The notes below the pieces were generated by a model. The model saw only the letters and a program-made list of their open reading frames with translations, had not been told where the DNA came from and did not search any database. Below are positions 3,716-43,400 of a DNA stretch of 64,000 bases, piece after piece; the first letter of the stretch is position 1, and the number at the start of each line of letters is the position of its first letter. Source of the stretch: Podarcis bocagei. Its lineage: Eukaryota. The translations under genes and the position numbers were made by a program. The stretch lies in assembly GCA_964188305.1 (NCBI GenBank), contig OZ076904.1. The stretch is one strand, 5' to 3'.

Positions 3716-3970
3716 CAGAGACAGGACCCCTGCGGTGATGGTGGGGAGAGAGGAGAAAGAGAGCAGCCCAAAATGAGACAGGAACCCACATTGAGTCGCT
3801 AGCCAGGGAAGCCCTACAGCCCTGGCACCATGGGGGGCTGGTCCATCAGGACAAGTGGGGCAGCAAGCATAGCCTGCCCTTAGCAGCCTGTCTGCCCCCT
3901 TGCTCACAACAGGTCCAGAAGGTGGCCTGACCGGCCGGCCAACTTCCTCCTCCTCCTCCTCCCCAGCCTA
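3716..3970 (-). repeat. Remnant copy of the orphan-gene intron repeated at about 7545-7830, 8260-8545 and 10808-10990
   Basis: Shared cagagacaggacccc...gagtcgctagccagggaagccctacagccctgg...cagcaagca. Confidence 0.8.
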
Positions 3971-3984
3971 TAGGACACAGGACC

Positions 3985-5175
3985 CTTGTTTGTGAGAAGA
4001 AGGGGCAGCACAGCATGCTGGGAAGAAGGATGTGAGGGAAATGAAATGAAACCTAATAGAGGTGAAATTATCCATAAAGCTAATAAGTGAAAACGAACAA
4101 AAGACACCTTGGGATTTATTTATTTGGTTATACACTGGAAGAAACGGTTAAATTTCAAATTTAACCCGGGGAGGCTGGCAGGGGCAGGGCCCCCAGGTGA
4201 GCCCGGGAGAGAGGGGGGCCCCTTGGGGGATCTGCACTCTGCACGCCCTCAGAGGCCGGAGAGGCTGGCAGGGGCAGGGCCCCCAGGTGGGCCCGGGAGA
4301 GAGGGGGGCCCTGGGGGGATTTGCACTCTGCACGCCCTCAGAGGCCGGAGAGGCTGGCAGGGGCAGGGCCCCCAGGTGAGCCCGGGAGAGAGGGGGGCCC
4401 CTGGGGGATCTGCACTCTGCACGCCCTCAGAGGCCAGAGAGGCTGGCAGGGGCAGGGCCCCCAGGAGGGACCGGGAGAGAGAGGGGCCACTGGGGGAACT
4501 GCACTCTGCACGCCCTCAGAGGCCGGAGAGGCTGGCAGGGGCAGGGCCCCCAGGTGGGCCCGGGAGAGAGGGGGGCCCCTGGGGGATCTGCACTCTGCAC
4601 GCCCTCAGAGGCCGGAGAGGCTGGCAGGGGCAGGGCCCCCAGGTGGGCCCGGGAGAGAGGGGGGCCCTGGGGGGATTTGCACTCTGCACGCCCTAAGAGG
4701 CCTCGTAGTCTAAGCTCAGGGGGCTCTCTGAGCCAGCATCTCTCTGGGGGGTGAGGGGTTTCTTCCCATTTGTCGACATGCTTCTTAAATAGTGGTGCCC
4801 GGAATTGGACACATTATTCCAGCTGCCGCCTGACCAAGGCAGAATAGAGCTCAGTCTTGTAAGCCACTGGTATTAGTCGCAATAAAAGTAATAATAATCA
4901 CAACAAGATAGTAATATTAGACTTAGTTAGCAAATATTTATGCTGCTTAACTGTGTGCATTGCAATCCCTTATTCATTGTTGTGCATAGTAATTTTAAGT
5001 GCATTCTTAATATTACAATCAAGGTGCAGTACTTTTAAAATGCATATTTTCTTTAAATATAAACACAGAAATAAATGAAGCTCCAAATTCATCGGATGAT
5101 GACCTGTGCCACAAAGAGGGAACCAGGCAGAGGGCCTTTTCAGTGGTGGCGCCCGCCCTGTGGAACGACCTCCCA
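3985..5175 (+). repeat. Local segmental duplicate of about 12855-14300
   Basis: Colinear flanks, minisatellite, CR1 fragment and AT-rich tract in both copies. Confidence 0.85.
4168..4702. repeat. GC-rich minisatellite, 6 x 89 bp
   Basis: cactctgcacgccct recurs at 4235, 4324, 4413, 4502, 4591, 4680. Confidence 0.95.
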
Positions 5176-5495: not shown

Positions 5496-5845
5496 ACTCT
5501 CCTTCCTTGGAGGTTTTGAAGCAGAGTTTGGATGTCCATCTGTTGGGATGCTTTAGCTGAGATTCTACGCCATATTGCCCCTTCCTTTCAAGCCACCTTC
5601 CAGGATCGTTCCCCTCTCAGTCCTGCCTTCTCTTTCTCCTCCAACACCGCAGACGCTGTCGTTCTCTCACACTTCTCCTTCGCCGTCCACCCTTTGCCCG
5701 CTGTCTTCTCAAAAGGTGTCGCGCTCTAGGACTGGGGCTGGCCGTGTGGGACGCTGGTGTAGGGCCACGAGAGTTTGGGTTTCTCGCCCGGCTTGCCTCC
5801 GCGTTCTGATAATTTATTCCTCCTCTCCAGTTTGTACCACAAGGA

Positions 5846-8800
5846 TTAAGACCTGTGGAAGGACAACAAAAAGGAAATGTCCCTTAGGACTCTGGCGCCT
5901 CCAGGTGCTACTTCCCCTGCCACCACTGACGGAGGAAGGTGGATGCAGGGGGGGGGGGTATTGCCCCAAGTGTCATCCCTGGGGTGTGTGTGACAAAATC
6001 TCCCCGGGTGAATCAGTGCGAGCCTCCCAACTCCTCCTCACCTTGGTTCGGGGTGGACACAGCTGCGATGCTGCCACATCCAGCGCCTGAGCCGCGCGCA
6101 GAGTGGCTTCCTTTCTGCCTGCGCCCCGCTGCTGGTGCTTGTACTGGGTTGCCCCGGTGGCACTGGTGGTGCTGGTGACGGCGCTCTTCTGAAGACCTTG
6201 TGGACCCAGGAGATGATGGAAGCCAGGCAAGTGGGGGTCTTCGGGGGCCTTTTTTCCTCGCAGTCCTGTGAGAAACGTAAACAATTCACCTCCAGATTCT
6301 GGGAAAATGCCACAATCATTAATCAATCAAACAATCAAACGATTGATTAAACCCGTATGCCATCCTTCATCTGAAGCTCTCAGGGCGGCTTACAGCATAA
6401 AAATACAAAATAAAAACACAGCATATGTATTAAAAACAAAAACGAACTCATAAGCCAACCTCCCAATCCACAAGCATGTTGAAAAGGCCACGCGTTGTTC
6501 CATTAGCCAAAGGCTGGTTCTGGAGCAGAACTTTCCACGTTGGTGACACACTTTGGAGACATGCCTCATTTCGCAACACAGGGATTCAGTTCAACTAGCC
6601 CCTTTCCAGCCCTGGGAGGAGCACACAGGTTGGGAAGCTCTGTTCTAGAGAAACGTCTTTGCTTGGCATCCAAAGATACATAATGAAGGTGCCAGATGAG
6701 CCTCCCTGGAGAGAGCATTCCGCAAGTGGGGAGCCACCACAGAAAAGGCCCCTTCTTGTGTTGCTGCCCTCCAGACCGTTTGTGAAGGAGCCACACGAAG
6801 AAGGGCCTGTGTGGTGGCAGGCTGTCATAACCCCTCCTTTTTTTGGGGGGGGCGAGGCGTTATACGAAAGGGTTGTAGTCAGGAGGGAACACTCCTCTCC
6901 CAAGTTCTCATGTGGTCAGCCTTGGAGAGATCTGAACGAGACACAAAACCAAGAACAAGAGGGTGGGGGGAAGGTATAGGAGGCAGGAAAACCCCAGAGA
7001 GAACTGGCTTTGCGAAGTGCCAACATGGTTTTATTATCGCCAAACCCACTTTGCAATTAATAACTTCATTTGGCAGGAGCCACCTGGAAACTCATTCTAA
7101 AGAGATATCTTACAAAACAAATACCAAACCAAAAGGAACCCAGGAGAATTATCTCCACCCCCATCGTTCTGCCCGGACACTGAGATGCAGCGCCAGGGCC
7201 TTCTGGCAGTTCCCCCACTGCAATAAGCGAAGTTACAGGGAACCAGGCAGAGGGCCTTCTCGGTGGTGGCACCTCCTGTGGAATGCCCTCCCAGCAGATG
7301 TCAAAGAAATGAACAACTCTCTGACTTTTAGAAGACATCTGAAGGCAGCCCTGTTCAGGGAAGCTTTTCATATGTCATGAATGAGTGTATGTTTTGTCTG
7401 ACCTCAAGTACGCTTGCCTCCAGGTGTTCTCCGGGTGGGGGGCACGGCAAATCAAGGGCCTCCTTGTCCTCCCCGTCCTCCTCTGGGGGGCTGCCTGGTT
7501 GTTCTTGTGGCTCTTCCTCCTTGCTAGCCACTTCAGAGGCTGACTGCTGGCAGAGACAGGACCCCAGAGTTGACGGTGGGGAGAAAGGAGAAAGAGAGCA
7601 GCACAAAATGAGACAGGCAGGAACCCAGAAGGGAAACTCTCTTGCCTACATTGAGTCACTAGCCAGGGAAGCCCTACAGCCCTGGCGCCATGGGGGGCTG
7701 GTCCATCAGGAGGAGTGGGGCAGCAAGCATGGTCTGCCCTTAGCAGCCCCCTGCCTGTCTGCCCCCTTGCTCACCACCGTCCAGAAGGTGGCCTGGCCGG
7801 CCAGCTTCCTCCTCCTCCTCCTCCTCCTCCTCAGCCTCAGGGTAGCCCTTGTGCAGCTCAGCAGGGCTTCCCTCCTGCTCTGTCTGCTACGTACCTCATT
7901 GACGGAATCCCAGAAGGAATCGAGGGAAGACAGGGAGGACACAGAGGACAGAGAGGAAAGGTTGCTGAGGGAGCTGGTTGGGGAAAGTTTCGGAACGTGC
8001 AAGGAAAAGATGAAAAAGACGAGCAATTAAAAAAAGCAACCAAACATTAAAACTCAAGGTACCCATAACTGAAGCAACAGTTTCATTCTGCGGTTGATAT
8101 GCCCCCCTCCACTTCTGCCAATCACCGCTTAGGCCATGGCCACCTACCCAGTCGGGACTGAGGAGATCCAGACACGGTCTCGGGGTCTCCTCCTTGCCTT
8201 TGCCTTCGTCCTCCTTGTTAGCTACTTTTTCAGAGAATTCTTCATATTCGGAGGCGGACTGCTGGCAGAGACAGGACCCCAGAGGTGGTGGCAGGGAGAA
8301 AGGAGAAAGAGAGCAGCCCAAAATGAGACGGGCAGGAACCCAGAAGCCAAACTCTACTGCCCCCATTGAGTCGCTAGCCAGGGAAGCCCTACAGCCCTGG
8401 CGCCATGGGGGGCTGGTCCATCAGGAGGAGTGGGGCAGCAAGCATGGTCTGCCCTTAGCAGCCCCCTGCCTGTTTGCCCCCTTGCTCACCACCGTCCAGA
8501 AGGTGGCCTGGCCGGCCAGCTTCCTCCTCCTCCTCCTCCCCAGCCTCAGGGTTGCCCTTGTGCAGCTCAGCAGGGCTTCCCTCCTCCTCTGTCTGCTACG
8601 TACCTCATTGACGGAATCCCAGAAGGAATCGAGGGAAGACAGGGAGGACACAGAGGACAGGGGGGAAAGGCTGCTGGGGGAGCTGGTTGGGGAAAGTTTC
8701 GGAACCTGCAAGGAAAAGATGCAAAAGACGAGCAATTAAAAAACCAAACCAAACATTAAAACTCAAGGCACCCATAACTGAAACAACAGTTTCTTTCTTT

Positions 8801-11680
8801 TTTTAAATAAATTTTTATTGAGTTTTCACATTCTATATAGACATAACAAACACAAAAAGACAAAGACAAACATGTATAATTTCCAATTCTTACTTTCATA
8901 ACCACTTTCTCCGACTTCCCCGCACCTCCCCTTCATGCATCCTAATTCCAGGAATTAGTTCAGCAAGTTCTAGTCTCTTATCTTTAAAATATTAAATCAT
9001 ATTTTAACTTAATTCTTCTTAATTAATCAAATTTAACTTATATACATCAATTATAATCATTACATCCTTTCCAAAGGTCGACCTAAGTTCCCTTCCACCA
9101 ATTTCCCGATTTTCGTGTTAATTACTAAACATAATAACTAAACATAAAAATCATAAAATTATCCTGCTTTTAGATTCAAATAACTCTCACCCCCCCCCCT
9201 CTTTCCCGGTTTCAATCTCCCCAAAAGATGTCCACAATATCAGTTCCTAGCCTGGATTTCTCACGTCCGAGGCCTTCAAATCTCTATCAGTCCCTCTCCG
9301 TCGGTTTTGTTGGTCATCCTTTATGTTGGCCCTCAAATTTCGAAGAAGCTCTATCCCAGTAAGGTCAATGTTTCTTCCAACCAGCCCTCCAAATCCAAAA
9401 GCAAAAGCGGAGTCCCAATCATATTTCTTGCTTCTTTTAAGTCCAAATAGTCCAAATGTCCCATAGGCTCCCTCTTTCATCTTACACAAATTTATAATCC
9501 ATAGTTCTTTCGATCTCCCCATAAAGGGGCCTTCTTCATTCTTGATTTTCATCCAAATTCTCATTATCCATATCTTGTTTTCCTTGTATTCCCCATCTGT
9601 AGGCTTATGGTTGGCCCTTTCCTCCTGAAGTATTTCCGCTCCTCCTTCCCTCTCCTCTGGCTCCAAAGATATCTCTTCTGGTTCAGCTGCAGAATTTTCC
9701 TTTGTCAAGTCCATAACACAGTCAACAGAGTTGCTTACTTTAAAATTCAAGGCCACCAGCTTTGTAGCCATATCTGTGCTTTGTTCTTGAAGTTTTCCCA
9801 CAAGAGAGAACATTTTTTCCAGCTCTGCCTGTAATTTTCCATCTGCAGCCATTGTAATGTCTCAGAATCCCCCCTAGAGGGATTCTGGTTACTTAAGAAT
9901 CCTTCTCCAGCAGTCAATTACTCTTACTTATTTCTTCATTGTTTCCAACAACTTTAGATCAAATGTGGCCCATCTAGCCCACAAAAATAATAAGTAGCAG
10001 ATTTTTCTAGCTTAAACAGCTCGTTTGACAGCTGTCAAACTCCTTATGTCTCCTCACCAGGCTCACTCGCAGATCGCTCGCGGCTCCAGGGGGGGGGGGT
10101 TATATCTTCTAAAATTCGGTTCTTATCCTCCAGCACAAAAACTTGCCAATAGTGAAATTAATAACTTTTATCTCACAAAGAGAAAGACAGTCTCTCCACC
10201 TTAGTTATCCGATTCTTGCTTTAAATGACTACAGAGAGGGGGGGGTGCAGACTTCCTTTTAATACACCCCCGATCGTGCCGAATTCAAGGGAAAGAAGAT
10301 TTTTAGATCCAAATTCCGTACTACTCACGGGTTATTTCTTTTTCAGTCCAAATGTTCAAGGAAAAAAGTCAGCGCTCTCCGGCCATGGCTCGCGGCTTCA
10401 CTCCACTGAAGTAGCGGTCTACTCACAGCACCACGCCACTCTCCGCACCCTCTCCGAAGCCTTTAAAAAGGCTTCTTTGTGGGTCGGGGGGGCGCAAATG
10501 GTGCCCGCCGAGTCACCAAGTCCACAGGCTTCAGCGCCTGTGGTTTCTGAGGGTCCCCGCGTCACCGCCGCGGCAGGATCCGTCCTCAGTAGAGCCGATT
10601 CCCTCCGGAGCTCGGAGGGAATCCGCCATTAGTCGATCGCGCTAACCCGGAAGTCACTGAAACAACAGTTTCATTCTGTGGTTGATCACCGCTTAGGCCA
10701 CGGCCACCTACCCAGTCAGGACTGAGGAGATCCAGCCGTCTTGCGGTCTCCTCCTCGCCTTTTCCTTCACCGTCCTTTTCATGGAAAATGTCATCCTCGC
10801 TGGCTGACTGCTGGCAGAGACAGGACCCCAGAGGTGGTGGCGGGATTAAGGAGAAAGAGAGCAGCCCAAAATGAGACAGGCAGGAACCCAGAAGGCAGAC
10901 TCTCCTGCCCACATTGAGTCGCTAGCCAGGGAAGCCCTACAGCCCTGGCGCCATGGGGGGCTGGTCCATCAGGAGGAGTGGGGCAGCAAGCACAGCACAT
11001 TCACTCTCAAGGCACCCATAATTGAAACAACAGAACAGCGGCATAGCCAGCCGCTCGGGTGCCCGGTTCAACGCGGGGGTCCTGCGGGCGGGGGGCGCTG
11101 CCTGGAGCCTCTCTGCCGCCTCCCCCCCAGCTGTAGGGCGGCTGAGGGAGAGGCAGGGGGCAGACGCAAGCCCCACGCTGCCGTTTCAGGCCGCACCCAG
11201 CCTGCAGGGGCCCAAGCCAACACGTCACTCCCAGGAGAGATGCATGGATCAGGCACTCTGCAGCCCCCCCCCCGGTAAGTGCCAGACCCTGAGATTTGGC
11301 GCCCAGTGCCAGCCGTGTTTTTTGACTCAACTAAAGGGTTTGGTGAGGCCATTTTTTATTTTTATTTTAAACTCGGCTTTTTGTCCTTTTGCCACCCCCC
11401 TCAGTGGTGACACCTGGGGCGGCTCCCAACCCCCCACCCTCCTTTCTCTGCAACTGCAACAGAATAAAAGGACTCAAAACTCCCTTAGCAGTTTCCTGCT
11501 GGTCCCCTCACCATTTTCTTCTCACTTTGCAGTTGCAGATGAGGCCCCCCAAAGGCGGCTGCGCAAGGCAGGGTTTGGCCTCAACTGCAAAGTGAGGTTG
11601 GGATTCTGAGCCGATGTCACAGCCAGGTTCCGATCAGTCCATTTCCTCCAAGGGGGGGGGGCTGTTTCCCCTGAGGGCGA
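5846..11680 (-). CDS. Uncharacterised multi-exon orphan gene or recent pseudogene; acidic/Ser/Pro-rich protein. Exons 11526-11680, 10712-10807, 8604-8705, 8148-8258, [7895-7996, dead acceptor], 7403-7543, 6042-6265, 5846-5852
   Basis: Polypyrimidine+CAG acceptors and GT donors; 96/102/111/102/141-nt phase-0 exons join in one frame; 224-nt phase-2 exon joins a terminal exon ending ...HPEPRS*; AATAAA 28 nt after the stop. The 5'-most exon is out of frame and no start codon was identified. Confidence 0.6.
6042..6265 (-). CDS. Orphan gene penultimate exon (DCEEKRPPKTPTCLASIISWVHKVFRR...RLRRWMWQHRSCVHPEP)
   Basis: tttctcacag acceptor; CAAG/gtgagg donor. Confidence 0.6.
7403..7543 (-). CDS. Orphan gene exon, 141 nt (SASEVASKEEEPQEQPGSPPEEDGEDKEALDLP...VLE)
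   Basis: cagcag acceptor; GAG/gtcaga donor. Confidence 0.58.
8148..8258 (-). CDS. Orphan gene exon, 111 nt (SASEYEEFSEKVANKEDEGKGKEETPRPCLDLLSPDW)
   Basis: cagcag acceptor; TGG/gtaggt donor. Confidence 0.6.
8604..8705 (-). CDS. Orphan gene exon, 102 nt (VPKLSPTSSPSSLSPLSSVSSLSSLDSFWDSVNE)
   Basis: cttttccttgcag acceptor; GAG/gtacgt donor. Confidence 0.6.
8794..10655 (-). mobile_element. Full-length non-autonomous L1-like retroposon (HAL1-like), 1862 bp, one 201-aa ORF (9247-9852), no ORF2
   Basis: Perfect 17-bp TSD ACTGAAACAACAGTTTC (8777-8793, 10656-10672); 5' end GACTTCCGG...ATGGCG; AATAAA plus A-tail; empty site preserved in the paralogous intron at about 8068-8090. Confidence 0.85.
9247..9852 (-). 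CDS. Retroposon-encoded 201-aa protein with coiled-coil-like N-terminus (ORF1-like position)
   Basis: Uninterrupted ORF; strong Kozak acaATGG; heptad-like LQAELEKMFSLVGKLQEQSTDMATKLVAL. Confidence 0.55.
   Translation of the reverse strand: MAADGKLQAELEKMFSLVGKLQEQSTDMATKLVALNFKVSNSVDCVMDLTKENSAAEPEEISLEPEEREGGAEILQEERANHKPTDGEYKENKIWIMRIWMKIKNEEGPFMGRSKELWIINLCKMKEGAYGTFGLFGLKRSKKYDWDSAFAFGFGGLVGRNIDLTGIELLRNLRANIKDDQQNRRRGTDRDLKASDVRNPG
10712..10807 (-). CDS. Orphan gene exon, 96 nt (SASEDDIFHEKDGEGKGEEETARRLDLLSPDW)
   Basis: cagcag acceptor; TGG/gtaggt donor; paralog of the 8148-8258 exon. Confidence 0.58.
11036..11440. mobile_element. GC-rich non-autonomous DNA transposon remnant (hAT-like end)
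   Basis: Starts cagcggcatagc, resembling the TIR of the 16723-17173 element; far end not clearly defined. Confidence 0.4.
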
Positions 11681-11797
11681 CTGCTGAACACACCACCCAA
11701 GAGAAAAAGAAGGAGAAAAGCGGAGAAATCTTTTAATTCTGTAGCAAGAAAGAATGAGTGCCAGGAGTTTTCTTTTCCCTGCACTCCTCCATTGCAA

Positions 11798-12415: not shown

Positions 12416-13409
12416 CTTTCCCTGGCCACTCTGGGCGGCTCCCAACAGAATATTAAAAGCACTATAAAAATCACAGCCTCAACATGCATTTAAAGCATTT
12501 TTGGAGCTCTAAATTGCAGGTAAAGCAACTGGCGGGTGGCCAGCGCCATTTTGGCCTCTGTTGTCCAGGGCGCAGGAGCCGCGGGACGTGGGGAAAAGGG
12601 GGAAGCCGTTCTCGGTGCCTCCAAGGGAAGGAGGAAAAGGACGAGGTCTCTTCGCGACTTCCTGGGTTATGGGGGTTGATGAGTATAATAATTGGTTGTT
12701 ATTAGTTTATTAGCAGGCCAGGAGGAAGGTTGCGCAGGGCAGCCTGGGAAGGGCGAGGGAAAGGCTGTGAGGAAAAGCCTCCTCTCTTTCTCCCTCAAGT
12801 TTAAATGGAAGAATCCAAATAGGTTTAGAGAAAAATAAGATGATAGGAAACAGGATCCTTCTTTGTGAGAAGAAGGGGCAGCAAAGCATGCTGGGAAGAA
12901 GGACCTGAGGGAAATGAAATGAAACCCAATAAAGGATAATTTACCAATAAAGCTAATATGTGAAACCTAACAAAAGACACCTTCAGATTTATTTATTCAG
13001 TTATACGTTGGAAAATGGGTAAATTTCAATTATAGGAAGCTGGATCCATGTTTGTGAGAAGAAGGGGTAGCAAAGCATGCTGGGAAGAAGGACGTGAGGG
13101 AAAGAAACCTAATAAAGGGTAATTTACCAATAACGCTAATAAGCGAAGCCGAACATAAGACTCCTTGAGATTGAATTATTTGCTTATACACTGGAAAAAC
13201 GAGTAAATTTCAAATTTATTCATGCTGGGATTCGACCATTGGCCCAACGGAGCTGGCAGTGCATGCTGGGAAGTCTGCCGGTGGAGGCTGGCGGGAGTCG
13301 CAGGGCCTTTTGAAGGTGGCCCCTTCCCCTCCGAGGGCCACATGACCCTCCTCGTCCGCCAGGGACACCAGCGCCTGCAGCCCGTCCAGCTGGCCAGAGT
13401 CAACCAAGG

Positions 13410-13830
13410 GCCAGAGAGGCTGGCAGGGGCAGGGCCCCCAGGAGGGAGAGGGGCCCCTGGGGGATCTGCACTCTGCACGCCCTCAGAGGCCAGAGAGGCT
13501 GGCAGGGGCAGGGCCCCCAGGAGGGAGAGGGGCCCCTGGGGGGATTTGCACTCTGCACGCCCTCAGAGGCCGGAGAGGCTGGCAGGGGCAGGGCCCCCAG
13601 GAGAGAGAGGGGCCCCTGGGGGGATTTGCACTCTGCACGCCCTCAGAGGCCGGAGAGGCTGGCAGGGGCAGGGCCCCCAGGTGGGCCCGGGAGAGAGAGG
13701 GGCCCCTGGGGGGATCTGCACTCTGCATGCCCTCAGAGGCCGGAGAGGCTGGCAGGGGCAGGGCCCCTAGGTGGGCCCGGGAGAGAGAGGGGCCCCTGGG
13801 GGGATTTGCACTCTGCACGCCCTCAGAGGC
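13410..13830. repeat. GC-rich minisatellite, 5 units (80- and 90-bp variants), same family as 4168-4702
   Basis: Core motif at 13469, 13549, 13629, 13719, 13809. Confidence 0.95.
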
Positions 13831-15046: not shown

Positions 15047-15945
15047 CTAATTCCTTGTTGTCAGGTGCTCCTTTGTGTTCAGATCAGGCCTCAGCACAAT
15101 AATGTAGCACTTGGGAAGGAAGATGCAGCCCAGAAGCCCAGCACTGGAGGCCAACATAGAGAAGATCTGCACGGCCACCATGTACTTGCCCTTGGTGCTC
15201 AGGTAGGGGGGCACAAAAGACACCCAAACACTGCAGAAGACCAGCATGCTGAAGGTGATCAGCTTGGCTTCGTTGAAGGAGCCGGGCAGCTTCCTGGCTA
15301 GGAAAGCCACCGTGAAGCAGGTGGCAGCCAAGAAGCCCAGGTAGCCGAGGGCAACGTAGAACATGGCCACAGACCCTTCGTTGCATTGCAGGGTGATCTC
15401 TTCCACCTGGGAGCGCATGTCGGGCTCTGGGAATGGGGGAGAAGAGCCCAGCCAGATGGTGCAGATGAGAACTTGCCCCCCAGAACAGGAGATGACAATG
15501 GAGTTGGCCAGACTCTTGCCCAGCCATCTCCGCACCCTGTTCCCGGGCTTTGTGGCCAGGAAGGCCAGCACCACCGTGATGGTCTTTGCCAAGACAGAAG
15601 AAACAGCAGCTGAGAAGATGATGCTGAAGGCCGTTTGTCGGAGAAGGCAGGTCTCTTTCCTTGGGCGCCCGATGAAGAGGAAGGAGGACAGAAAGGAAAG
15701 CAGGAGGGAGACGAGCAGGATGTAGGAGAGGTCCCGGTTGTTGGCTTTGACAATGGGAGTTTCCTTGTATTTAATGAAGATTCCCAACACAATGCCTGCT
15801 GTTAAGGACAAGAAGAGGGCAATGGAAGCTAAAACCATTCCCAAATATTCTCTATAAGTCAGGAAGGTGGTAATCTTGGGGACACATTGATCTCTGTCCT
15901 TGTTTGAATGGTGATCTTCTGAGCATTTGGTGCAATGTTCTGCAT
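15047..15945 (-). CDS. V2R-B exon 6 (end of Cys-rich domain + 7TM)
   Basis: 899 nt, class C 7TM motifs, TAG stop. Confidence 0.95.
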
Positions 15946-18900
15946 CTGGGGAAGAGAAAAAGAGTGGCTGTAGCATCACTTACATCCCTAATGATCTGTG
16001 CTCTATTAACATTGTGATCTAGGATCAACTGAGAGGCAGAGACCACTCCACTTCTGTTAACTGCATTGTTTGGATCCTGCCTATTCCTCTTTGTCTGAAC
16101 CTTTAAAATGCAGACATTGCTTCCATGCAATGTTCATAGCAGTGAGATCAGAACGGTCCATAGATTATATTGTAATAATTTTCACATGAAGTATTTATTT
16201 TTATTGTGCTTTTGCTGTTAGTATTTTGCTGCTTTTCATCGTCTATCCATTATTTTTGATAAGTGTCAACATTATTTCCTTTTTGTGTGGCTTGGTCTAA
16301 AAAATCAAAAAGGAATGCTTTGTGGGCATTCCTCTCACAGCTGCCCAGTTTGCAGCCCAGAGATTTCTTCCTTATGGTCATTCCTATCAACTCACTTCCT
16401 GGATGTAATAAAGGTGATTAATACTAAGGAAGTCAAGGAAGGATTCCCATTCCCCTATGTCTGCAGTGTGTGAGACTGAATTTCTGTCCTGTGTTTACTC
16501 TCTCCAGGAATTTCTTCCCCCTTGGAATCACCCACCTTCCCGAGTGGAGAAGGTCCCTTCTGCACACTGAGCACAAGCATAGCAGCAAATGGGCTTTCCT
16601 TCTAGAACCACCTTGGCATATCCAGGTCGACATCTTTCTGTACACCTGGAACGAGGTACGGCCTAACCAGAAAGACAAGAAGGTGCAACAAAGAGGAACA
16701 GTTAGGAGTATTTGTGGGTATGCAGCGGCGTAGCGTGAGTTGTCAGCACCCGGGGCAACGCAAGTAATTTGCGCCCCCTAACCCGGGGCAAGGCAAGTAA
16801 TTTGCGCCCCCAACCCCTAACCTGCGAGTTTCCGCTGGCGCTGCCACCCAAATGACGTCGCTTGCTCGGAGGAGGAGGGGGGCAGAGAGGCGAGGAAAAT
16901 TCAACGGCCCAGCAGCTGCAGCAGCAGCGGCGGAGGCAGGGCTGTGAAGAGGGGCTGCCTGGCGCGTCCTCCGCGGCGAGCGCTGAGAGCCGCTGCCTGC
17001 CGGGCGCCTTCAGCCTGGACACGCGCACAGCTCGTCGGTTCCGCGAGACATGCGGCTCTGCTACAGCCTGCGCCCGAGGCTCTTCGGCGACTCCGGAGGC
17101 ATCGAGCACGCCCCCCCCAGATGTTGCGCCCGGTGCGGCCGGCACCCCTGGCACCCCCCACGCTACACCACTGTGGGTATGTAATTCACTCAACGCAATC
17201 TCTATAGCATGGTGGTGATCCCTGACAACTGGTCTTGCCAGCTCAGGATGATGGGAGCTGTAGTCCAAAGACAGCTGGGGACCCAAGTTTGGGGAACCCT
17301 GATCTACCCCAAGATTTGCAGTTGTGGCCCCCAATGAATCATTCAGGAAATCATCACAGCTCTACATCAATCACATAGAGGTTGGAGAGGGGTCTGTCTG
17401 GCAGGGAATCCTGAGAGATCCCAGTTGCCCTTTCCAGCAGCCAAGATCCCCAGTTGCCTGCCATCTCCCCATTCCCTTAATGCGGTCAGTTCTCTTTAGC
17501 TGCAGAACATGATCTCTGGAATGCAGCCTTGACCCCTCATCAGGGTCCTTTCAACCCCCCGCTGACCATTGGGGTGACCAGAATATCTTGTGCCTTAAAT
17601 TGAGTTCAGTACAGCTGAGGTTTGAGCCACAGAACTCTGTTTCCTCTTCTCCATTTACCTGTTTCCCTTCTTAAAAGAACTTCTAAGCAAATGACAATGG
17701 GTCTGACATGTGATTCCCCCAAATTTCAGGATTTGAATTATCTCTCACACGGTTCATTCTCGTCTTTGTGTGTGTCAGAGAGAGAGAGAGAAAGTGCTTT
17801 GCTTTTCAATGCCCAACTGAAAGGAGAGTTGGGGTTTTGGGTTTTTTTTGCCAAATTGCCTTAATTCATTTTCCAAATTTCACCACATCAACCACAAATT
17901 AAGACAAATTTAATACAAGTGAGCTTACTCACAAATTTAAAAAAATATGCAATAAATCAGTAATTATCATTTGTAAAATAAATTACTTTTCATCCTCCTG
18001 CATGTATGAAAGGTCAATATCCTTTATTTGAGCATCCCAAATTCCCCCCCCCCTATCTCAGCTGATTTAGAAAGAAGGCGTGCTGGTTCCAGCTGTTACT
18101 GGACAGTCAACCTGACATGGTCATTCTGCAGTGGTTGTCAAGGAACAGCACAATCAGGATCTCCTAGCCCCCTCCCCCAATTATCCCCCCTACCTTATTG
18201 AATTTCTTGTTCCACTCAATGGCTTCTGGGTTAATGGTGAACTTTATGCCAGCAGATGCTCCTCTCCTTATATTCCCAATTTTCACAAGGTCACGGGACT
18301 TATTGGGAGACATCGCCCAGTTCATAATATTGAAGTCCGTTGGCATCTCCCAGTTCTCATCCAAGCACAGTCTGCCCCTGGAAGTATTCAGACACCGGAT
18401 TTCTCTCAAGAAAGGGTGAAGCTGGAATGGCAGGGGAAAGCGCCAGCATTAAGAAACTGGGAAGCTACAACAGGCAATTAATCAAGCCAAAATGGGGAAA
18501 ACACCAGGGCCAGGGGGGCTATCAGCAAAGTACTATAAGAAATTGCAAGATTGTTTGGCACAACCACTAAAAGATTTAAGATACTTAGATTGTGCTGATT
18601 CTGAAAAAAGATACAGATCTATTATCAGTCAAAAATGATAGGCTGATTTCTCTATTAAATAATGACTATAAACTGTTTGCATACCTATTGGCAAATGACA
18701 TGAAAGTGCTATTAACGGATTTAATTCATCAGGACCAGGCTGGTTTTTTACCAGGCTGCCAGATGAAGGATTATATAAGGAATATAATTGATATAATAGA
18801 ATATCTGGAAGTTAGAAATGATAAGCAAGCAGTGTTGATTTTTATAGACGCAGAGAAGGCCTTTGACCATGTTTCATGGACTTCTACGAAGAAGACTATA

Positions 18901-21900: not shown

Positions 21901-23363
21901 GGTAAGATCCTGAGATCCTGGTTGATCTCTTGGATGGTGAACAGGAAAGACAACATGTACCAGTCAAACCTAGTTGACTTCCTGCAATAAATGAATCCTT
22001 TAAAAAGAGTGAAACTGATATTCATATTAATGGGAGGAAGGAAACATTANNNNNNNNNNNNNNNNNNNNNNNNNNNNNNNNNNNNNNNNNNNNNNNNNNN
22101 NNNNNNNNNNNNNNNNNNNNNNNNNNNNNNNNNNNNNNNNNNNNNNNNNNNNNNNNNNNNNNNNNNNNNNNNNNNNNNNNNNNNNNCCTTTTCCTGTCTA
22201 GCATTGAACAAAATTTTGGAGACCTCTGCTCCATGACAGGAACTTTGATGCAAACAGCACACAGAGCTGTTCAACAGTGGAACAGACTCCCTCCGAAGGT
22301 GACCATGTGTCATGGATGCTTCAGGTGTGATACCTCCGGGTCCCTTCCATCTCTACAACTCTGTGATTCTATTCTACTGTGGTTCTATGAGTAAGCAATG
22401 AAGGTGCCCCTCAACATTTGAGATATACTGGGAAGCTGCTCCCTAGGTTGCTTTTGCTGCAGTGGTCTTTGTCGCCTTCCAAGGTGCTAGACTACAGGTA
22501 GATAACAGACAATTTTATTGAAGGAGGGGAAGCACCAAATACCCCAGTCCCCTTTGACTTGGAAATGAGGCCTGTTGGCTTTCAGGTTTGAGTGTGTGGT
22601 AAAATTTATAATTTTGCTCATATTTTTCATCGCTGACTCCACCAGTGAGGACACCCCCTGGTCTGTATTATTTTATATAATTATTTTATTTGAAGCATAT
22701 CATTCCATGTGCAAAACTGTAGCATTCCTTAATGACAGTTTATGAATTGTCCAAAGGGAATAATATTGAATAAAACCTTTGAGCCTTGGAAATTCACTGA
22801 GTTTCATGGCATCCTGCAGGTGGGGAAATTCAGTGCATCCTTTTGAACCCCTACCAGATTTCTTGCATTCTTCTAAAAGCAACACAGAGGAATAGGCACA
22901 GGATTGTTTTACTTAGGAAGACAGAGGGAATAAGGAAATTGGAGAGGTTTGTGTGGAATCTTCTCCTGGACCCCCCAGCTCCCATCAGCCCAGGCCAGCA
23001 AGACCAATGGTCAGGACAGGGCAGTCCTGCAACATCAGCCCTTGGCTCCCCAGCCCTGAGATAGGGGCTCTTTCCTATCACAACCATTACAAGGACTGGA
23101 GGACCGTGAAACCCATCCGCATATGATTTTACATACACTTCCTTCCTGATGAAGGGTGTCTGAGTAAAGCTGTATGGAGTTCTCTCAAGAAGGCGTTTTG
23201 GAGAGATGATCCCACTGATGAGGAAATGTCCCGGCCGGTAGTAATTGCGAGCATCCGTTTCATCCCTGACCAGATTCAAGGGGCATTTTGCCTTGTGGTT
23301 CCCGCAGACTCCAAAGGGCATCATGAGCAGCAGAAGCAGCAACAGAAGGAGCAGGGATCTCAT
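15047..23363 (-). CDS. V2R-B: complete vomeronasal type-2 receptor, 861 aa (exons 23137-23363, 21690-21981, 20581-21393, 18194-18421, 16536-16662, 15047-15945)
   Basis: Exon lengths 227+292+813+228+127+899=2586, frame-consistent and all GT-AG; signal peptide, Venus flytrap, Cys-rich domain, class C 7TM ([31 protein letters not shown]). Confidence 0.93.
16536..16662 (-). CDS. V2R-B exon 5 (Cys-rich domain)
   Basis: [15 protein letters not shown]...[15 protein letters not shown], 127 nt. Confidence 0.92.
16723..17173. mobile_element. Non-autonomous hAT transposon (451 bp) in V2R-B intron 4
   Basis: TIRs cagcggcgtagcgtg / cacgctacaccactg; perfect 8-bp TSD TGGGTATG; absent from C, D and E. Confidence 0.88.
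18194..18421 (-). CDS. V2R-B exon 4
   Basis: [14 protein letters not shown]...EWNKKFNK, 228 nt. Confidence 0.92.
18928..19156. mobile_element. Tc1/mariner (Tigger-like) MITE nested in L1; also 31025-31221 and 61213-61427
   Basis: TA + cagtggtac...gtaccactg + TA. Confidence 0.85.
19352..19703 (-). mobile_element. Sauria SINE, full length, nested in L1
   Basis: tRNA-like head, (ACCTTT)n tail, 12-bp TSD AACAGTAGGTTA. Confidence 0.88.
20581..21393 (-). CDS. V2R-B exon 3 (Venus flytrap core)
   Basis: ISHGF...[32 protein letters not shown]...LQPWQ, 813 nt. Confidence 0.95.
21690..21981 (-). CDS. V2R-B exon 2
   Basis: 292 nt, V2R motifs. Confidence 0.93.
22050..22186. other. Assembly gap (137 N) in V2R-B intron 1
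   Basis: Run of N. Confidence 0.99.
23137..23363 (-). CDS. V2R-B exon 1
   Basis: MRS(L)10MMPFGVCG signal peptide, 227 nt. Confidence 0.88.
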
Positions 23364-27611: not shown

Positions 27612-28510
27612 TTAATTTCTGGTTGTCAGGTGCTCCTTTGTGTTCAGATCAGGCCTCAGCACAATAATGTAGCACTTGGGAAGGAAGATGCAGCCCAGAA
27701 GCCCAGCACTGGAGGCCAACATAGAGAAGATCTGCACGGCCACCATGTACTTGCCCTTGGTGCTCAGGTAGGTGGGAACAAAAGAGACCCAAACACTGCA
27801 GAAGACCAGCATGCTGAAGGTGATCAGCTTGGCTTCGTTGAAGGAGCCAGGCAGCTTCCTGGCTAGGAAAGCCACCGTGAAGCAGGTGGCAGCCAAGAAG
27901 CCCAGGTAGCCGAGGGCAACGTAGAACATGGCCACAGACCCTTCGTTGCATTGCAGGATGATCTCCTCCACCTGGGAGCGCATGTCGGGCTCTGGGAATG
28001 GGGGAGAAGAGCCCAGCCAGATGGTGCAGATGAGAACTTGCCCCCCAGAACAGGAGATGACAATGGAGTTGGCCAGACTCTTGCCCAGCCATCTCCTCAC
28101 CCTGTTCCCGGGCTTTGTGGCCAGGAAGGCCAGCACCACCGTGATGGTCTTTGCCAAGACAGAAGAAACAGCAACTGAGAAGATGATGCTGAAGGCCGTT
28201 TGTCGGAGAAGGCAGGTCTGTTTCCTTGGGCGCCCGATGAAGAGGAAGGAGGACAGAAAGGAAAGCAGGAGGGAGACGAGGAGGATGTAGGAGAGGTCCC
28301 GGTTGTTGGCTTTGACTATGGGAGTTTCCTTGTATTTAATGAAGATTCCCAACACAATGCCTGCTGTTAAGGACAAGAATAGGACAAGAGAAGCTAACAC
28401 CATTCCCAAATATTCTTCATAAGCCAGGAAGATGATAATCTTGGGGACACATTGATCTCTGCCCTTGTTTGAATGTTGATCTTCTGAGCATTTGGTGCAA
28501 TGTTCTGCAT
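27612..28510 (-). CDS. V2R-C exon 6 (7TM)
   Basis: 899 nt, class C 7TM motifs. Confidence 0.95.
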
Positions 28511-39598: not shown

Positions 39599-40497
39599 TT
39601 AATTCCTTGTTGTCAGGTGCTCCTTTGTGTTCAGATCAGGCCTCAGCACAATAATGTAGCACTTGGGAAGGAAGATGCAGCCCAGAAGCCCAGCACTGGA
39701 GGCCAACATAGAGAAGATCTGCACGGCCACCATGTACTTGCCCTTGTTGCTCAGGTAGGTGGGCACAAAAGACACCCAAACACTGCAGAAGACCAGCATG
39801 CTGAAGGTGATCAGCTTGGCTTCGTTGAAGGAGCCAGGCAGCTTCCTGGCTAGGAAAGCCACCGTGAAGCAGGTGGCAGCCAAGAAGCCCAGGTAGCCAA
39901 GGGCAACGTAGAACATGGCCACAGACCCTTCGTTGCATTGCAGGAGGATCTCTTCCACCTGGGAGCGCATGTCGGGCTCTGGGAATGGGGGAGAAGAGCC
40001 CAGCCAGATGGTGCAGATGAGAACTTGCCCCCCAGAAGAGGAGATGACAATGGAGTTGGCCAGACTCTTGCCCAGCCATCTCCTCACCCTGTTCCCGGGC
40101 TTTGTGGCCAGGAAGGCCAGCACCACCGTGATGGTCTTTGCCAAGACAGAAGAAACAGCAACTGAGAAGATGATGCTGAAGGCCGTTTGTCGGAGAAGGC
40201 AGGTCTCTTTCCTTGGGCGCCCGATGAAGAGGAAGGAGGACAGAAAGGAAAGCAGGAGGGAGACGAGGAGGATGTAGGAGAGGTCCCGGTTGTTGGCTTT
40301 GACTATGGGAGTTTCCTTGTATTTAATGAAGATTCCCAACACAATGCCTGCTGTTAAGGACAAGAAGAGGGCAATGGAAGCTAAAATGATTCCCAAATGT
40401 TCTCCATAAGCCAGGAAGATGATAATCTTGGGGACACATTGATCTCTGTCCTTGTTTGAATGGTGATCTTCCGGGCATTTGGTGCAATGTTCTGCAT
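39599..40497 (-). CDS. V2R-D exon 6 (7TM)
   Basis: 899 nt. Confidence 0.94.
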
Positions 40498-43400
40498 CTG
40501 GGGAAGAGAAAAAGAGTGGCTGCAGCATCACTTACATCCCTAATGATCTGTGCTCTATTACGTTTTGAAGAAATCCTAGAGATTTCTTCCTTGTGATCAT
40601 TCCTTTCAACTCTCTTCCGGGATGTAATGAAGGTGATTAATCCTAAAGAAATTGAGGAAGGTGCCACATTCCACAATGTCTGCAGAATTCTCACAAAAAG
40701 TGTGTGAGACTGGATTTCTGGCCTGTGTTTACTCTCTCTAGGAATACCTTCCCCCTTGGAGTCACCCACCTTCCTGGGCGGAGAAGGTCCCTTCTGCACA
40801 CTGAGCACAAGCATAGCAGCAAATGGGCTGTCCTTCTAGAACCACCTTGGCATATCCAGGTCGACATCTTTCTGTACACCTGGAACGAGGCACGGCCTAA
40901 CCAGAAAGACAAGAAGGTGCAAGAAAGAGGAACAGTTAGGAATATTTGTGGGTATGTAATTCAGTCATAGGGACGCGGCTGGCGCTTTGGGTTAAACCAC
41001 AGAGCCTAGGACTTGCCGATCAGAAGGTCGGTGGTTCGAATCCCCGTGACGGGCTGAACTGCCATTGCTCAGTCCCTGCTCCTGCCAACCTAGCAGTTCG
41101 AAAGCAAGTCAAAGTGCAAGTAGATACATAGGTACCGTTCCAGCGGGAAGGTAAACAGCATTTCCGTGCGCTGTTCTGGTTCGCCAGAAGCGGCTTAGTC
41201 CTGCTGCCCACATGACCCAGAAGCTGTACGCAGGTTCCCTCAGCCAATAAAGCGAGATGAGCACCGCAACCCCAGAGTCGGACACGACTGGACCTAATGG
41301 TCAGGGGTCCCGTTACCTTTACCTTAATTTACACATAGAGTGATTTCAAACAGATCTCTGGTCTGCAGCCTTTCAAAATTTCAAAAATAAATTGCTTTCC
41401 ATCCTTCTGCATGTATGAAAACCCAATTGTTCACTTTTACTAGGTGTTTTCCCTTTTCTTCTACGTAGTCCATTCGGTTAAACATTCTGTCCAGAATTCT
41501 TAAATTCTCAGTCTGGTTTGGAAATAGATAGTGTCTTTTCTAAGGACCTCTTGGCTCTATCCTTTCTTTGAGCACCCCAAATCCCCCTCCTATCTCAGCT
41601 GCTGTGGAAAGAAGGAGTGGCGGTTGCAGCTGTTATTGGACGGTCAAGACATCATTGATCAACCTGATATAGTCATTTTGCAGCAGTTGTTCAAGGAAAA
41701 ATATATTCAGGATCTCCTGGCCTCCCCTCTCTGTGATTCCCCTTACCTTGTTGAATTTCTTGGGCCACTCAATAGCTTCTGGGTTAATGGTGAACTTTAT
41801 GCTAGCAGACGTCTCTCTCCTTATATTCCCAATTTTCACAATGACATGAGACTTATTGGGAGACATCACCCAGTTCATAATATCGAAGTCTCCTGGCAGC
41901 TCCCAGTTCTCATCCAAGCACAGCCTGCCTCTGGAAGTATTCAGACACTGGATTTCTCTTAAGAAAGAGTGAAGCTGGAAGGACAGAAGAAAGCACCAGC
42001 ACTGAGAAACCTTGAAGCCAAGATGGATATCTCAGTCCTACTCACTTCAACCTCTTATGATTTGGGGCCTGCGTGTATCTCATGTAGACTGGAATTCCTA
42101 TTCAGCCATTTCTATTACTACAGACCATGCAAGTAAGTAAGTAAGTAAGTAATCTTTATTTGCTTCAGCCATCGGCCATAGCAATAAAACAACAATATGA
42201 TATACAAAGAATAGAAATAAAAAGTCAATTATATAAAATACATTTTAGGGTTTTGAATCAGTAGTCAAATAGTGGATCTTATTCCAGCGCCAAGAATTTA
42301 AAATGCGGATGTATATAAAGCATAAAATGGCCCCAAAAATAGGCTCGGCACATTGGGTTAAAAAGTAATAAAAGAATTTAAAACAGGTCCAGGTCTAGGA
42401 CACACTACCCAGTCAGAGTAGCCCTGAGTTTCAGAGCCTGCACAATAAAGATTGCCACCCCACGTGAAATTTGGGGATTTGCGTCCACAAGAAGCGATTT
42501 CAAACAGTCTTCCTTAGATGTAATATTGGTGGATGTGGAATTATCCAACCCACAAGCTGTCCAATCCTATATCAGGAATTTTTAAATGTTTAATATTTTA
42601 GTATGAATTTCTTTATTTTGGGAGCTGCCCAGAGTGAGGAGGCAACTGAAGTAGATGTATAAGCAGTGCTATTTTTCTAGAAAAGAAGGTGCCGGAACTC
42701 ACCATGAACACCTCCTTCTTACATTGGCAATGGCACCCACCTGAAAGGTGTCAAAACTGAGTTCCAGCGAGTTCCCCTCTGAAAAAAAGCCCTGGGTATA
42801 AGCAGTAAAGGACGCAGGTGGCGCTGTGGGTTAAACCACAGAGCCTAGGACTTGCTGATCAGAAGGTTGGCGGTTCGAAGCTGTATGCCGGCTCCCTCGG
42901 CCAATAAAGCGAGATGAGCGCCACAACCCCAGAGTCGGCAACGACTGGACCTAATGGTCAGGGGTCTCTTTTCCTTTATAAGCAGTAACATTATCGTTAT
43001 GGAATGGGCCGTCTCTATTTTCAACAGAGTTGAATACCAATGTTGGGCGGTATGCTACTATTGCTAATACTAATAGTAACTATGATATTTTGCAGGTTTA
43101 TCCACAGTCAAGATCAGCATCTGTGTGGACTGCAGTTTGCAAAAAGGGGGAAGGAAATACCTGCCACGGATGTAGCCTTGCGTGTCCCCATTGCTCTCCT
43201 TCCTCCACCATCAGCCTCCTCTTGGATCTAGATGAAAGCGAAGCATGCAAGGCCTGAGCCACAGCCTGAACATTGATGTAAGTGCCATAGCTGTCTAGAA
43301 ACAGGACTCTCTCAGGCTCCCATTGGGATAATGGCTCCAGTTTCTCCTCCTCTTTGCATCTTATCCTGCCTTTCACGGACAACAAATGCTTTGAATATGT

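What the first reader, a model, noticed from the sequence alone, without database searches (positions are those of the whole stretch)
5846..11680. Hidden orphan multi-exon gene built by tandem duplication of a two-exon module
Seen: minus-strand segments bounded by polypyrimidine-CAG acceptors and GT donors, with lengths 96, 102, 111, (102) and 141 nt (all phase 0), then 224 nt (phase 2) and a terminal exon with stop and AATAAA. Spliced product: SASEDDIFHEKDGEGKGEEETARRLDLLSPDW-VPKLSPTSSPSSLSPLSSVSSLSSLDSFWDSVNE-SASEYEEFSEKVANKEDEGKGKEETPRPCLDLLSPDW-[VPKL..]-SASEVASKEEEPQEQPGSPPEEDGEDKEALDLPCPPPGEHLEASVLE-DCEEKRPPKTPTCLASIISWVHKVFRRAPSPAPPVPPGQPSTSTSSGAQAERKPLCARLRRWMWQHRSCVHPEPRS*. Acidic and Ser-rich modules alternate. 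The three SASE exons diverge much more than their upstream introns, yet all stay multiples of 3, which suggests selection on a coding frame. I recognise no family. Inference: a fast-evolving, disordered, lineage-specific protein embedded in a V2R cluster, possibly co-regulated with it (by analogy to non-receptor partners such as H2-Mv in rodent V2R neurons) or germline-expressed.
Basis: partly seen in the sequence, partly recalled or inferred. Interest (0 to 1): 0.75.

Follow-up and report, generated by a model that had tools for sequence, protein, structure and literature searches.

The report
Uncharacterised reptile gene inside V2R array
The predicted multi-exon gene is real (spliced RNA in a related lizard, annotated look-alikes in wall lizards), but it is not an orphan: it is a shortened, fast-evolving copy of an uncharacterised gene family found in lizards, snakes and turtles, and it appears to have been copied along with vomeronasal receptor genes.

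Summary
RNA contigs of a related species (run X1) are joined exactly at four predicted introns with GT..AG ends.

The C-terminal exon finds Podarcis muralis LOC144329118, which has the same V|S3|C exon junctions, lies between V2R genes and is collinear with the window.

"Orphan" fails. The gene is a truncated paralogue of a Pfam-less family found next to ARMC6 in Lacerta agilis and present in lacertids, snakes, skinks, iguanians, amphisbaenians and turtles. The family shares a conserved C-terminal module predicted as two basic helices.

I add the missing first coding exon. It ends in ATG|GTGAGG at 11514-11510, the same donor site as the ancestral M-A-G-K-L exon.

Evolution is fast: dN/dS is about 0.6-0.7 and all exon indels are in frame. 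The orthologous P. muralis copy has a frameshift.

There is no expression evidence for the window's own species. Function and any link to V2R neurons are untested. Modest interest.

The parts
11512..11682 (-). First exon E0: 5' UTR ending in the start codon ATG (11514-11512), followed by donor GTGAGG (11511-). The 5' limit is uncertain: 11682 is a possible CAG acceptor, and the transcript start may lie further upstream.
   Evidence: This is the only strong-donor, phase-0, ATG-containing candidate between the gene and the upstream V2R. The donor site aligns with the donor of the ancestral first coding exon (ATG GCT GGG AAA CTG|GTGAGG in Lacerta agilis) and with ATG|GTGAGG in three P. muralis copies. 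X1 depth over 11520-11700 is 295.
10712..10807 (-). Exon S1 (96 nt, phase 0), acidic module starting SASEDD, with a tandem CAGCAG (NAGNAG) acceptor.
   Evidence: The X1 contig joins 10710>8703 with CT..AC ends, depth 211. The P. muralis copies are 88-92% identical and keep the 96-nt length.
8794..10655 (-). L1-type ORF2-less retroposon with target-site duplication, inserted in intron 1. It is not part of the gene product.
   Evidence: Sequence (poly-A end, repeated gaaactgttgtttcagt). A 201-aa ORF lies at 9247-9852 with no Pfam match. The insertion is absent from the collinear P. muralis loci.
8604..8705 (-). Exon V1 (102 nt, phase 0), Ser-rich module starting VPKLSP and ending DSFWDSVNE.
   Evidence: Its acceptor is used in X1. 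It is 95% identical to P. muralis copy B. It is homologous to ancestral exon 2, which ends SLETLGGSEDIKE.
8148..8258 (-). Exon S2 (111 nt, phase 0). This is an extra acidic module with no counterpart in the three P. muralis copies examined.
   Evidence: It is 78% identical to S1 and 71% to the ancestral S exon. No junction evidence was shown for it. One low-depth X1 contig reads through its donor (record 6).
7895..7996 (-). Exon V2 (102 nt), a duplicate of V1. Its acceptor is CAC, so it is probably skipped in this genome.
   Evidence: 4 nt differences from V1, falling in three codons that all change the amino acid. The X1 joint 7543>7895 was laid here, but the relative probably has one V exon, as the three P. 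muralis copies checked do, so that joint says nothing about V2 use in this genome.
7403..7543 (-). Exon S3 (141 nt, phase 0), acidic and Pro-rich module starting SASEVASKEEE and ending EASVLE.
   Evidence: Both of its junctions appear in X1 (7543>7895 and 6264>7402). It is 96.5% identical to P. muralis copy B. The junctions V|S3|C are the same as in XP_077791798.
6042..6265 (-). Exon C (224 nt, ends in phase 2). This is the conserved C-terminal module of the family: two basic amphipathic helices separated by a Pro/Ser linker.
   Evidence: Both junctions are seen in X1.
5723..5851 (-). Terminal exon: the last codons (R completed, S, TAA at 5848-5846) and the 3' UTR with AATAAA at 5818-5813. In X1 the contig runs on about 325 nt beyond 5723.
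   Evidence: X1 record 1 (513 nt, depth 208) carries the joint 5850>6040.
7544..7729 (-). Conserved intronic element directly upstream of S3. Sister copies lie at 8259-8444 and 10808-10996.
   Evidence: The element is 90-98% identical among 10 copies and 84-88% identical to the ancestral paralogue, far above the exons. There is no conserved ORF, no Rfam hit and no unusual fold. X1 depth here is as high as over the exons.
3716..3969 (-). Truncated fourth copy of the V-to-S intron unit without an exon, downstream of the gene.
   Evidence: 79-82% identical to the units, cut off where a common interspersed repeat begins.

Best explanation
This is a genuine, spliced protein-coding gene on the minus strand. 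Its layout is E0(ATG)-S1-V1-S2-(V2)-S3-C-T, giving about 227 aa, or 261 aa if V2 is used. It is a shortened paralogue of an uncharacterised gene family found in squamates and turtles; the full-length gene examined (Lacerta agilis) sits next to ARMC6.

The derived gene keeps four pieces of the ancestral gene:
- the first-exon donor;
- the exon-2-like Ser-rich module (V);
- the exon-3-like acidic module (S), which has been multiplied;
- the C-terminal exon.

Inferred history: a partial copy landed in a V2R tandem array on the same small chromosome as the parent gene. It has since been copied, altered and sometimes disabled along with the V2R repeat units (birth and death as a passenger).

Inferred mode of action: the product is a charge-segregated, largely disordered protein. 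Its N-terminal modules are strongly acidic (net -28 over S1, V1, S2 and S3) and carry many S/T-x-x-D/E sites. Its C-terminal exon is basic (+7) and predicted to form two amphipathic helices. This is the only part conserved from turtles to lacertids, so it is the likely binding or anchoring end, with the repeated acidic modules as a variable-length tail.

Shown: gene structure, splicing in a relative, family membership, synteny and evolutionary rates. Inferred: the passenger history and the mode of action.
For: - Exons, phases and splice sites are as predicted.
- Spliced contigs of run X1 match four predicted introns with GT..AG ends at depth 99-211. That depth cannot come from genomic DNA in a 73-Mb contig set.
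- The whole-library HMMER search with exon C found P. muralis XP_077791798 (E 1.5e-28, 76% identity) with identical exon junctions.
- The P. muralis locus is flanked by 7tm_3 genes and is collinear with the window.
- A second P. muralis V2R locus, on the 14-Mb chromosome that also carries the parent gene, holds two more copies. One is 92-96% identical to the window's exons.
- P0023 has the S-V-S-V-S3-C-RS* layout.
- Profile searches reach Lacerta, Zootoca, Rhineura, Crotalus, Pantherophis, Lerista, Phrynosoma, Pogona, Anolis and six turtle genera.
- The parent gene lies beside ARMC6.
- The first-exon donor is shared with the parent gene.
- dN/dS is 0.59-0.71, and the indels are +9, -9 and -27 nt, all in frame.
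- 7 of the 11 exon differences listed for X1 are synonymous.
- Two helices are predicted, at residues 14-25 and 55-70 of exon C.
Against: - There is no RNA evidence from the window's own species. The two single-cell runs carrying the species label of the best DNA holder cover only repeats.
- The S2 and V2 junctions are unconfirmed, and the V2 acceptor is CAC.
- A dN/dS of 0.6-0.7 is close to neutral.
- The orthologous P. muralis copy B has a 1-nt deletion in exon C, so copies do decay.
- The window's protein is absent from the protein collection.
- The structure model is weak (pLDDT 61, pTM 0.25).
- No experiment or paper bears on the function.
Confidence: 0.7

Rival explanations
1. Transcribed relic. 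The copy in this genome is a decaying passenger of V2R array amplification. It is still spliced but makes no useful protein.
For: dN/dS is 0.6-0.7. The V2 acceptor is lost. The orthologous P. muralis copy is frameshifted. Only one of about five V2R units in the window carries a copy, plus a truncated fragment at 3716-3969. Intron 1 holds a young 1.9-kb retroposon. There is no coverage in the two RNA runs with the species label of the best DNA holder.
Against: All seven coding pieces are open, and the start codon and stop are intact. All exon indels among copies are multiples of 3. 7 of the 11 exon differences listed for X1 are synonymous. The expressed copy of the relative has no gap at the P. 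muralis frameshift site.
Confidence: 0.2
2. Functional partner of the neighbouring V2Rs. The gene would be co-expressed in vomeronasal neurons and needed for receptor handling, in the way H2-Mv/beta2-microglobulin accompany rodent V2Rs.
For: The gene lies on the same strand as V2R units and between them, at three loci in two species.
Against: - Most V2R units lack a copy.
- There is no signal peptide and no transmembrane segment, so it is unlike an escort of a membrane receptor.
- The parent gene sits beside ARMC6 in Lacerta agilis and occurs in many reptiles, which does not suggest a V2R-specific role.
- Copies decay.
- Tandem arrays carry passengers by default (general knowledge).
Confidence: 0.07
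3. Not a gene: chance open frames in a repeat or satellite unit, or exons of read-through V2R transcripts.
For: The unit is tandemly repeated. Exon C is open in all three frames. The X1 contig runs past the AATAAA.
Against: Four canonical junctions are seen in RNA. Homologous annotated proteins share the junctions. The C-terminal motif is conserved out to turtles. Within the window, the repeat unit occurs only at this locus.
Confidence: 0.02

Closest known systems
Podarcis muralis LOC144326050 (XP model P0023, 280 aa) and LOC144329118 (XP_077791798/9, P0001, 141 aa): NCBI 'uncharacterized protein' models
   Same: They have the same exon modules and junctions (S, V, S3, C, terminal 'RS*') and the same NAGNAG acceptors (the Q-SA variant). 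Exon C is 76-84% identical. Both lie inside V2R arrays, and L001 and L002 are collinear with the window.
   Different: - The window copy has its own S2-V2 unit, with an S2 exon unlike any P. muralis S exon.
- It has a 102-nt rather than a 75-nt V exon, compared with L001 and copy A.
- It has a 13-nt deletion that removes the older upstream ATG.
- It carries a retroposon in intron 1.
- P0023 has a different N-terminal leader and spans 39 kb, probably joining two copies.
Full-length reptile family (e.g. P. muralis LOC114588499, Crotalus tigris LOC120299080, Lerista edwardsae lerEdw1_008504, Mauremys reevesii LOC120391816), all uncharacterised
   Same: - Shared first-exon donor.
- Shared exon-2/exon-3 module with the same intron element between them.
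- Shared C-terminal motif TPSxLSLxSLVSWVRKIFRK...QPSTS...RLRxWxxQ..R(I/V)HP.
   Different: The full-length proteins are 350-540 aa and include a conserved middle region (LLDFRWLQEKEEEE, STGYFPCYRTYVEFPRYQPP, RKSPQKRKHR). The window gene lacks this region. In Lacerta agilis the full-length gene lies beside ARMC6, not inside a V2R array.
H2-Mv (non-classical MHC class I) genes in rodent V2R neurons
   Same: Both are non-receptor genes associated with V2Rs. Here the association is only genomic proximity.
   Different: There is no sequence or domain similarity (no Pfam hit), no signal peptide and no membrane segment. Co-expression is untested.
SCPP genes (secretory calcium-binding phosphoproteins; my own knowledge of the family)
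   Same: Both have runs of small phase-0 exons prone to duplication, acidic Ser-rich products, and an S-x-S-E start to some exons.
   Different: There is no signal-peptide exon: the ORF starts with M directly before SASE. The last intron is phase 2. The gene lies in a V2R array rather than beside SPARCL1.

Membership tests
Reptile uncharacterised family (LOC114588499 / LOC120299080 type) | C-terminal motif: amphipathic helix (L/I)(V/I)SW(V/I)xK(I/V)FR(K/R), a Pro/Ser linker with QPSTS, and a second basic helix RLRxW..Q..R.(I/V)HP | tested here: met
   Alignment A3 has invariant F25, P33, L59 and W62 and near-invariant S19, R26, R52, H71 and P72. HMMER E-values are 1.5e-28 to 1.5e-07.
Reptile uncharacterised family (LOC114588499 / LOC120299080 type) | First coding exon ends in phase 0 at a GTGAGG donor, and is followed by the exon-2/exon-3 module with the conserved intron element | tested here: met
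Reptile uncharacterised family (LOC114588499 / LOC120299080 type) | Conserved middle region (LLDFRWLQEKEEEE, STGYFPCYRTY.EFPRYQPP, RKSPQKRKHR) | tested here: not met
   This region is absent from the window gene. Only the DLLSPDW end of the S exons echoes DLLDFRW. The gene is therefore a truncated derivative, not a full-length member.
Lacertid V2R-array subfamily (LOC144329118 / LOC144326050) | Exon order S-V-(S-V)-S3-C-T with identical junctions and phases | tested here: met
Lacertid V2R-array subfamily (LOC144329118 / LOC144326050) | Position between V2R (7tm_3) genes, on the same strand, collinear flanks | tested here: met
Lacertid V2R-array subfamily (LOC144329118 / LOC144326050) | Transcribed and spliced | tested here: inconclusive
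   Met in a relative (X1). There is no exon coverage in the two runs carrying the species label of the best DNA holder (X21, X22).
SCPP genes | Signal-peptide exon and all-phase-0 introns | tested here: not met
   No upstream ORF-bearing exon other than ATG|GT was found. The last intron is phase 2.
MHC class Ib V2R partners (H2-Mv type) | MHC class I / Ig domains | tested here: not met
   There are no Pfam hits in any exon or in any family member.
   Within the window and three fetched loci, the unit occurs only at homologous gene positions. No repeat-consensus library was available.

The most novel reading that the evidence does not exclude
The roughly 200-nt element directly upstream of every S exon is a selected non-coding part of the gene, either an internal promoter / alternative first exon or a splicing control region. 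It is kept nearly unchanged (90-98% among copies, 84-88% to the ancient paralogue) while the coding exons beside it diverge several times faster. Under this reading, the V2R-array copies form a lacertid-specific, diversifying set of modular acidic proteins expressed with the vomeronasal receptors.
Probability: 0.08. Interest if true: 0.65.

Novelty: new member of a known kind. Interest (0 to 1): 0.3.

Why it matters
The finding gives a correct and complete gene model, start codon included, for a gene missing from the protein collection searched here, which may mean it is not annotated in this genome. It also ties a set of 'uncharacterized LOC' models into one reptile family defined by a conserved C-terminal motif.

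It is a clear example of a partial gene copy captured and amplified by a chemoreceptor tandem array. This matters when annotating V2R clusters and when interpreting 'lineage-specific' genes found in them.

The family has no Pfam model, no solved structure and no literature found here. Its function is an open but modest question.

Tried and rejected
- Pfam on each exon and on six family members gave nothing above noise.
- The word-index protein search with exon C alone found no candidate, because of the length window.
- A PDB profile search found nothing.
- Rfam and folding of the conserved intron element gave no family (one sub-threshold miRNA-like hit elsewhere, at 11095-11163) and a z-score of +0.7.
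- An alternative ATG-led leader inside the intron element was rejected. It is open in only 3 of 11 copies.
- The Toxocara canis hit P0002 (E 2e-16) was rejected. Its score is summed over 14 repeats at 29% identity.
- Paper searches by LOC identifiers and by topic found nothing on the family.
- Earlier scan notes held only the same first-stage notes.
- Exact look-ups for P0003 and P0025 were not on record.
- A fold search of the exon C model was not run, because a two-helix model with pTM 0.25 would give meaningless matches.
Full report
**Observation**

The window is a V2R array. 7TM exons lie at 15047-15979, 27612-28409 and 39599-40531 on the minus strand, with matching N-terminal exons throughout.

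The 715-bp tandem unit is real. The 190 nt upstream of the three S exons are 92-95% identical. The exons themselves are 79% (S1/S2) and about 45% (versus S3) identical. The chance that all five used exons stay open in frame is about 1e-3 by shuffling.

A 1.9-kb L1-type retroposon with a target-site duplication fills most of intron 1 (8794-10655).

**Transcription**

One reads call was available. Contigs of run X1 come from organism A, a relative about 94% identical in the exons. They carry joints 8703>10710, 7543>7895, 6264>7402 and 5850>6040, each with CT..AC ends on the plus strand (GT..AG on the minus strand), at depths 99-211.

That depth, in a 73-Mb contig set, rules out genomic DNA, so X1 is spliced RNA. 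The junctions V1>S2 and S2>V2 or S2>S3 were not shown. The P. muralis copies suggest the relative has only one S-V unit before S3, so X1 says nothing about S2 or V2.

Run X6 (organism B) and the two single-cell RNA runs carrying the species label of the best DNA holder (X21, X22) cover only interspersed repeats, especially a SINE at 7120-7519. Expression in the window's own species is therefore not shown. In X1 the terminal exon runs about 325 nt beyond 5723, past the AATAAA.

**Relatives**

No exon has a Pfam match. The word search with exon C alone was blank, because of its length window.

The whole-library HMMER search with the 74-aa exon C gave five hits. The best is P. muralis XP_077791798 (LOC144329118, E 1.5e-28, 76% identity). 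Its sequence runs ...DSLNE|AASEV...SVIE|DCEEE..., the same exon junctions as predicted here. Three lacertid proteins at 58-59% identity share only the C-terminal part. A Toxocara hit is a repeat artefact.

LOC144329118 lies between 7tm_3 genes. Its locus is collinear with the window: the V2R 7TM exon is 93-94% identical and the gene 85-87%.

A profile of the first hits found 19 proteins.

Its locus is a second V2R array, on the 14-Mb chromosome that also carries the full-length gene LOC114588499. It holds two copies:
- Copy B is the closest to the window. S3 is 96.5% identical, V 95%, C 94%, and the flanks 92-93%.
- Copy B has a single S-V unit and a 1-nt deletion in exon C that breaks the frame.

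A profile of the long forms reached snakes, a skink, iguanians, an amphisbaenian, a cordylid and six turtle genera. All are unnamed or carry composition-driven names, and none has a Pfam domain. In Lacerta agilis the full-length gene lies beside ARMC6. No PDB relative was found.

**Gene model**

In the L. agilis full-length gene the first coding exon is ATG GCT GGG AAA CTG|GTGAGG. Exon 2 (FPETDIGDSEDVCRRSPL..LETLGGSEDIKE) is the counterpart of the V exon. Exon 3 (SAYEGQ...DLLDFRW) is the counterpart of the S exon.

The same donor site exists in the window as aaaATG|GTGAGG (start codon 11514-11512). It also exists in all three P. muralis copies. Two of them (L001 and copy B) also keep the older ATG in frame (M-S-G-E-M), and the window has lost it through a 13-nt deletion.

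This is the only phase-0, ATG-bearing, strong-donor candidate between the gene and the upstream V2R. X1 depth over 11520-11700 is high.

The complete ORF is therefore M + S1 + V1 + S2 (+V2) + S3 + C + RS*. That is about 227 aa, or 261 aa with V2. I counted this exon by exon and did not build the joined sequence.

**Evolution**

| Comparison | dN/dS |
|---|---|
| Window vs P. muralis copy B (S1, V, S3) | 0.71 |
| Window vs P. muralis copy A (S1, S3, C) | 0.59 |
| Window vs the 78-Mb-chromosome copy (S1, S3, C) | 0.71 |
| Window vs the ancestral paralogue (C, S2, S1) | about 0.3 |

- Exon length differences among copies are 0, +9, -9 and -27 nt, all in frame.
- Of the 11 exon differences listed for X1, 7 are synonymous.
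- Against the ancestral paralogue, synonymous sites are near saturation (pS 0.5-0.67).

The gene evolves fast under weak purifying selection, and individual copies die.

The S2 exon is not a simple recent copy of S1. It is 78% identical to S1 and shares GKGKEETPRP and its first codons with the ancestral S exon.

**An unexplained feature**

The roughly 200 nt upstream of every S exon are 90-98% identical among 10 copies in two species. They are 84-88% identical to the ancient paralogue.

Synonymous divergence of the adjoining exons is several times higher:
- S1/S2 pS is 0.33, against 0.05 in the intron.
- Exon C pS is 0.61, against about 0.19 in the intron.

The element has no conserved ORF, no Rfam match and no unusual fold. 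Yet its RNA depth in X1 is as high as that of the exons. Constraint on a non-coding element (internal promoter, alternative first exon or splicing control) and intron-limited gene conversion both remain possible.

**Product**

- S1, V1, S2 and S3 carry net charges of -7, -2, -6 and -13, with 11 S/T-x-x-D/E sites in total.
- The V exons are 41% Ser.
- Exon C has a net charge of +7.
- AlphaFold on a 13-sequence alignment gives two helices (residues 14-25 and 55-70 of exon C, pLDDT about 70-75), a disordered Pro/Ser linker and no globular fold (pTM 0.25).
- There is no signal peptide and no membrane segment.

The C-terminal module is the only piece conserved from turtles to lacertids. I take it as the functional end, and the acidic modules as a variable tail. 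This is inference.

**Verdict**

'Orphan' is wrong. This is a truncated member of an uncharacterised family found in squamates and turtles, already modelled by NCBI in wall lizards. It was most likely carried along by V2R array amplification. A functional tie to V2Rs is possible but unsupported.

**Limits and rules followed**

- The N run at 22050-22186 was left alone.
- Run identities and tissues were coded, so the expressing tissue is unknown.

Noticed in passing
window 8794-10655 (-): A young L1-type, ORF2-less retroposon sits in intron 1. It has a roughly 17-bp target-site duplication, a poly-A end and a 201-aa ORF (9247-9852) with no Pfam match. It is absent from the collinear P. muralis loci, so it was inserted after the split. 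Another first-stage note (s1-359645) flags it.
   Followed up: partly
window 4166-4702 and 13409-13830: Arrays of an 89-90-nt G+C-rich satellite flank the gene on both sides (TRF scores 946 and 601). The same satellite forms an array of at least 3.9 kb at the start of the P. muralis locus L002 (1-3887).
   Followed up: partly
window 7544-7729, 8259-8444, 10808-10996 (-); L003 9914-10117: The intron element upstream of each S exon is far better conserved than the exons and well represented in X1 RNA. There is no conserved ORF, no Rfam hit and no unusual fold. Constraint versus gene conversion is unresolved.
   Followed up: partly
window 7120-7519: A SINE-like repeat in the S3-C intron has very high depth in all four RNA runs (up to 27,700 in X6). 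It carries many loose ends, meaning reads from other copies.
   Followed up: no
L002 48744-48966 (P. muralis OZ076973.1): The P. muralis copy closest to the window has a 1-nt deletion in a C run early in exon C, which shifts the frame. The NCBI model P0023 spans 39 kb and seems to join exons of copy A to the terminal exon of copy B.
   Followed up: partly
L003 10001-10117 (Lacerta agilis CM020433.1): The NCBI model for the L. agilis full-length gene, named 'serine/arginine repetitive matrix protein 1-like', starts inside the conserved intron element. It omits the true first two coding exons (MAGKL | FPETDIGDSED...), which are present upstream at about 7771-7785 and 9706-9837.
   Followed up: partly
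window 10808-10813, 8259-8264, 7544-7549 (-): All three S exons have tandem CAGCAG acceptors. The P. muralis model P0023 uses the upstream one at one S exon (giving Q-SAIEE), so NAGNAG splicing that adds one Gln is likely.
   Followed up: no
window 3716-3969 (-): A truncated fourth copy of the V-to-S intron unit lies downstream of the gene, just upstream of the next V2R's first exon. It is cut off by an interspersed repeat that also occurs at about 5500-5545.
   Followed up: partly
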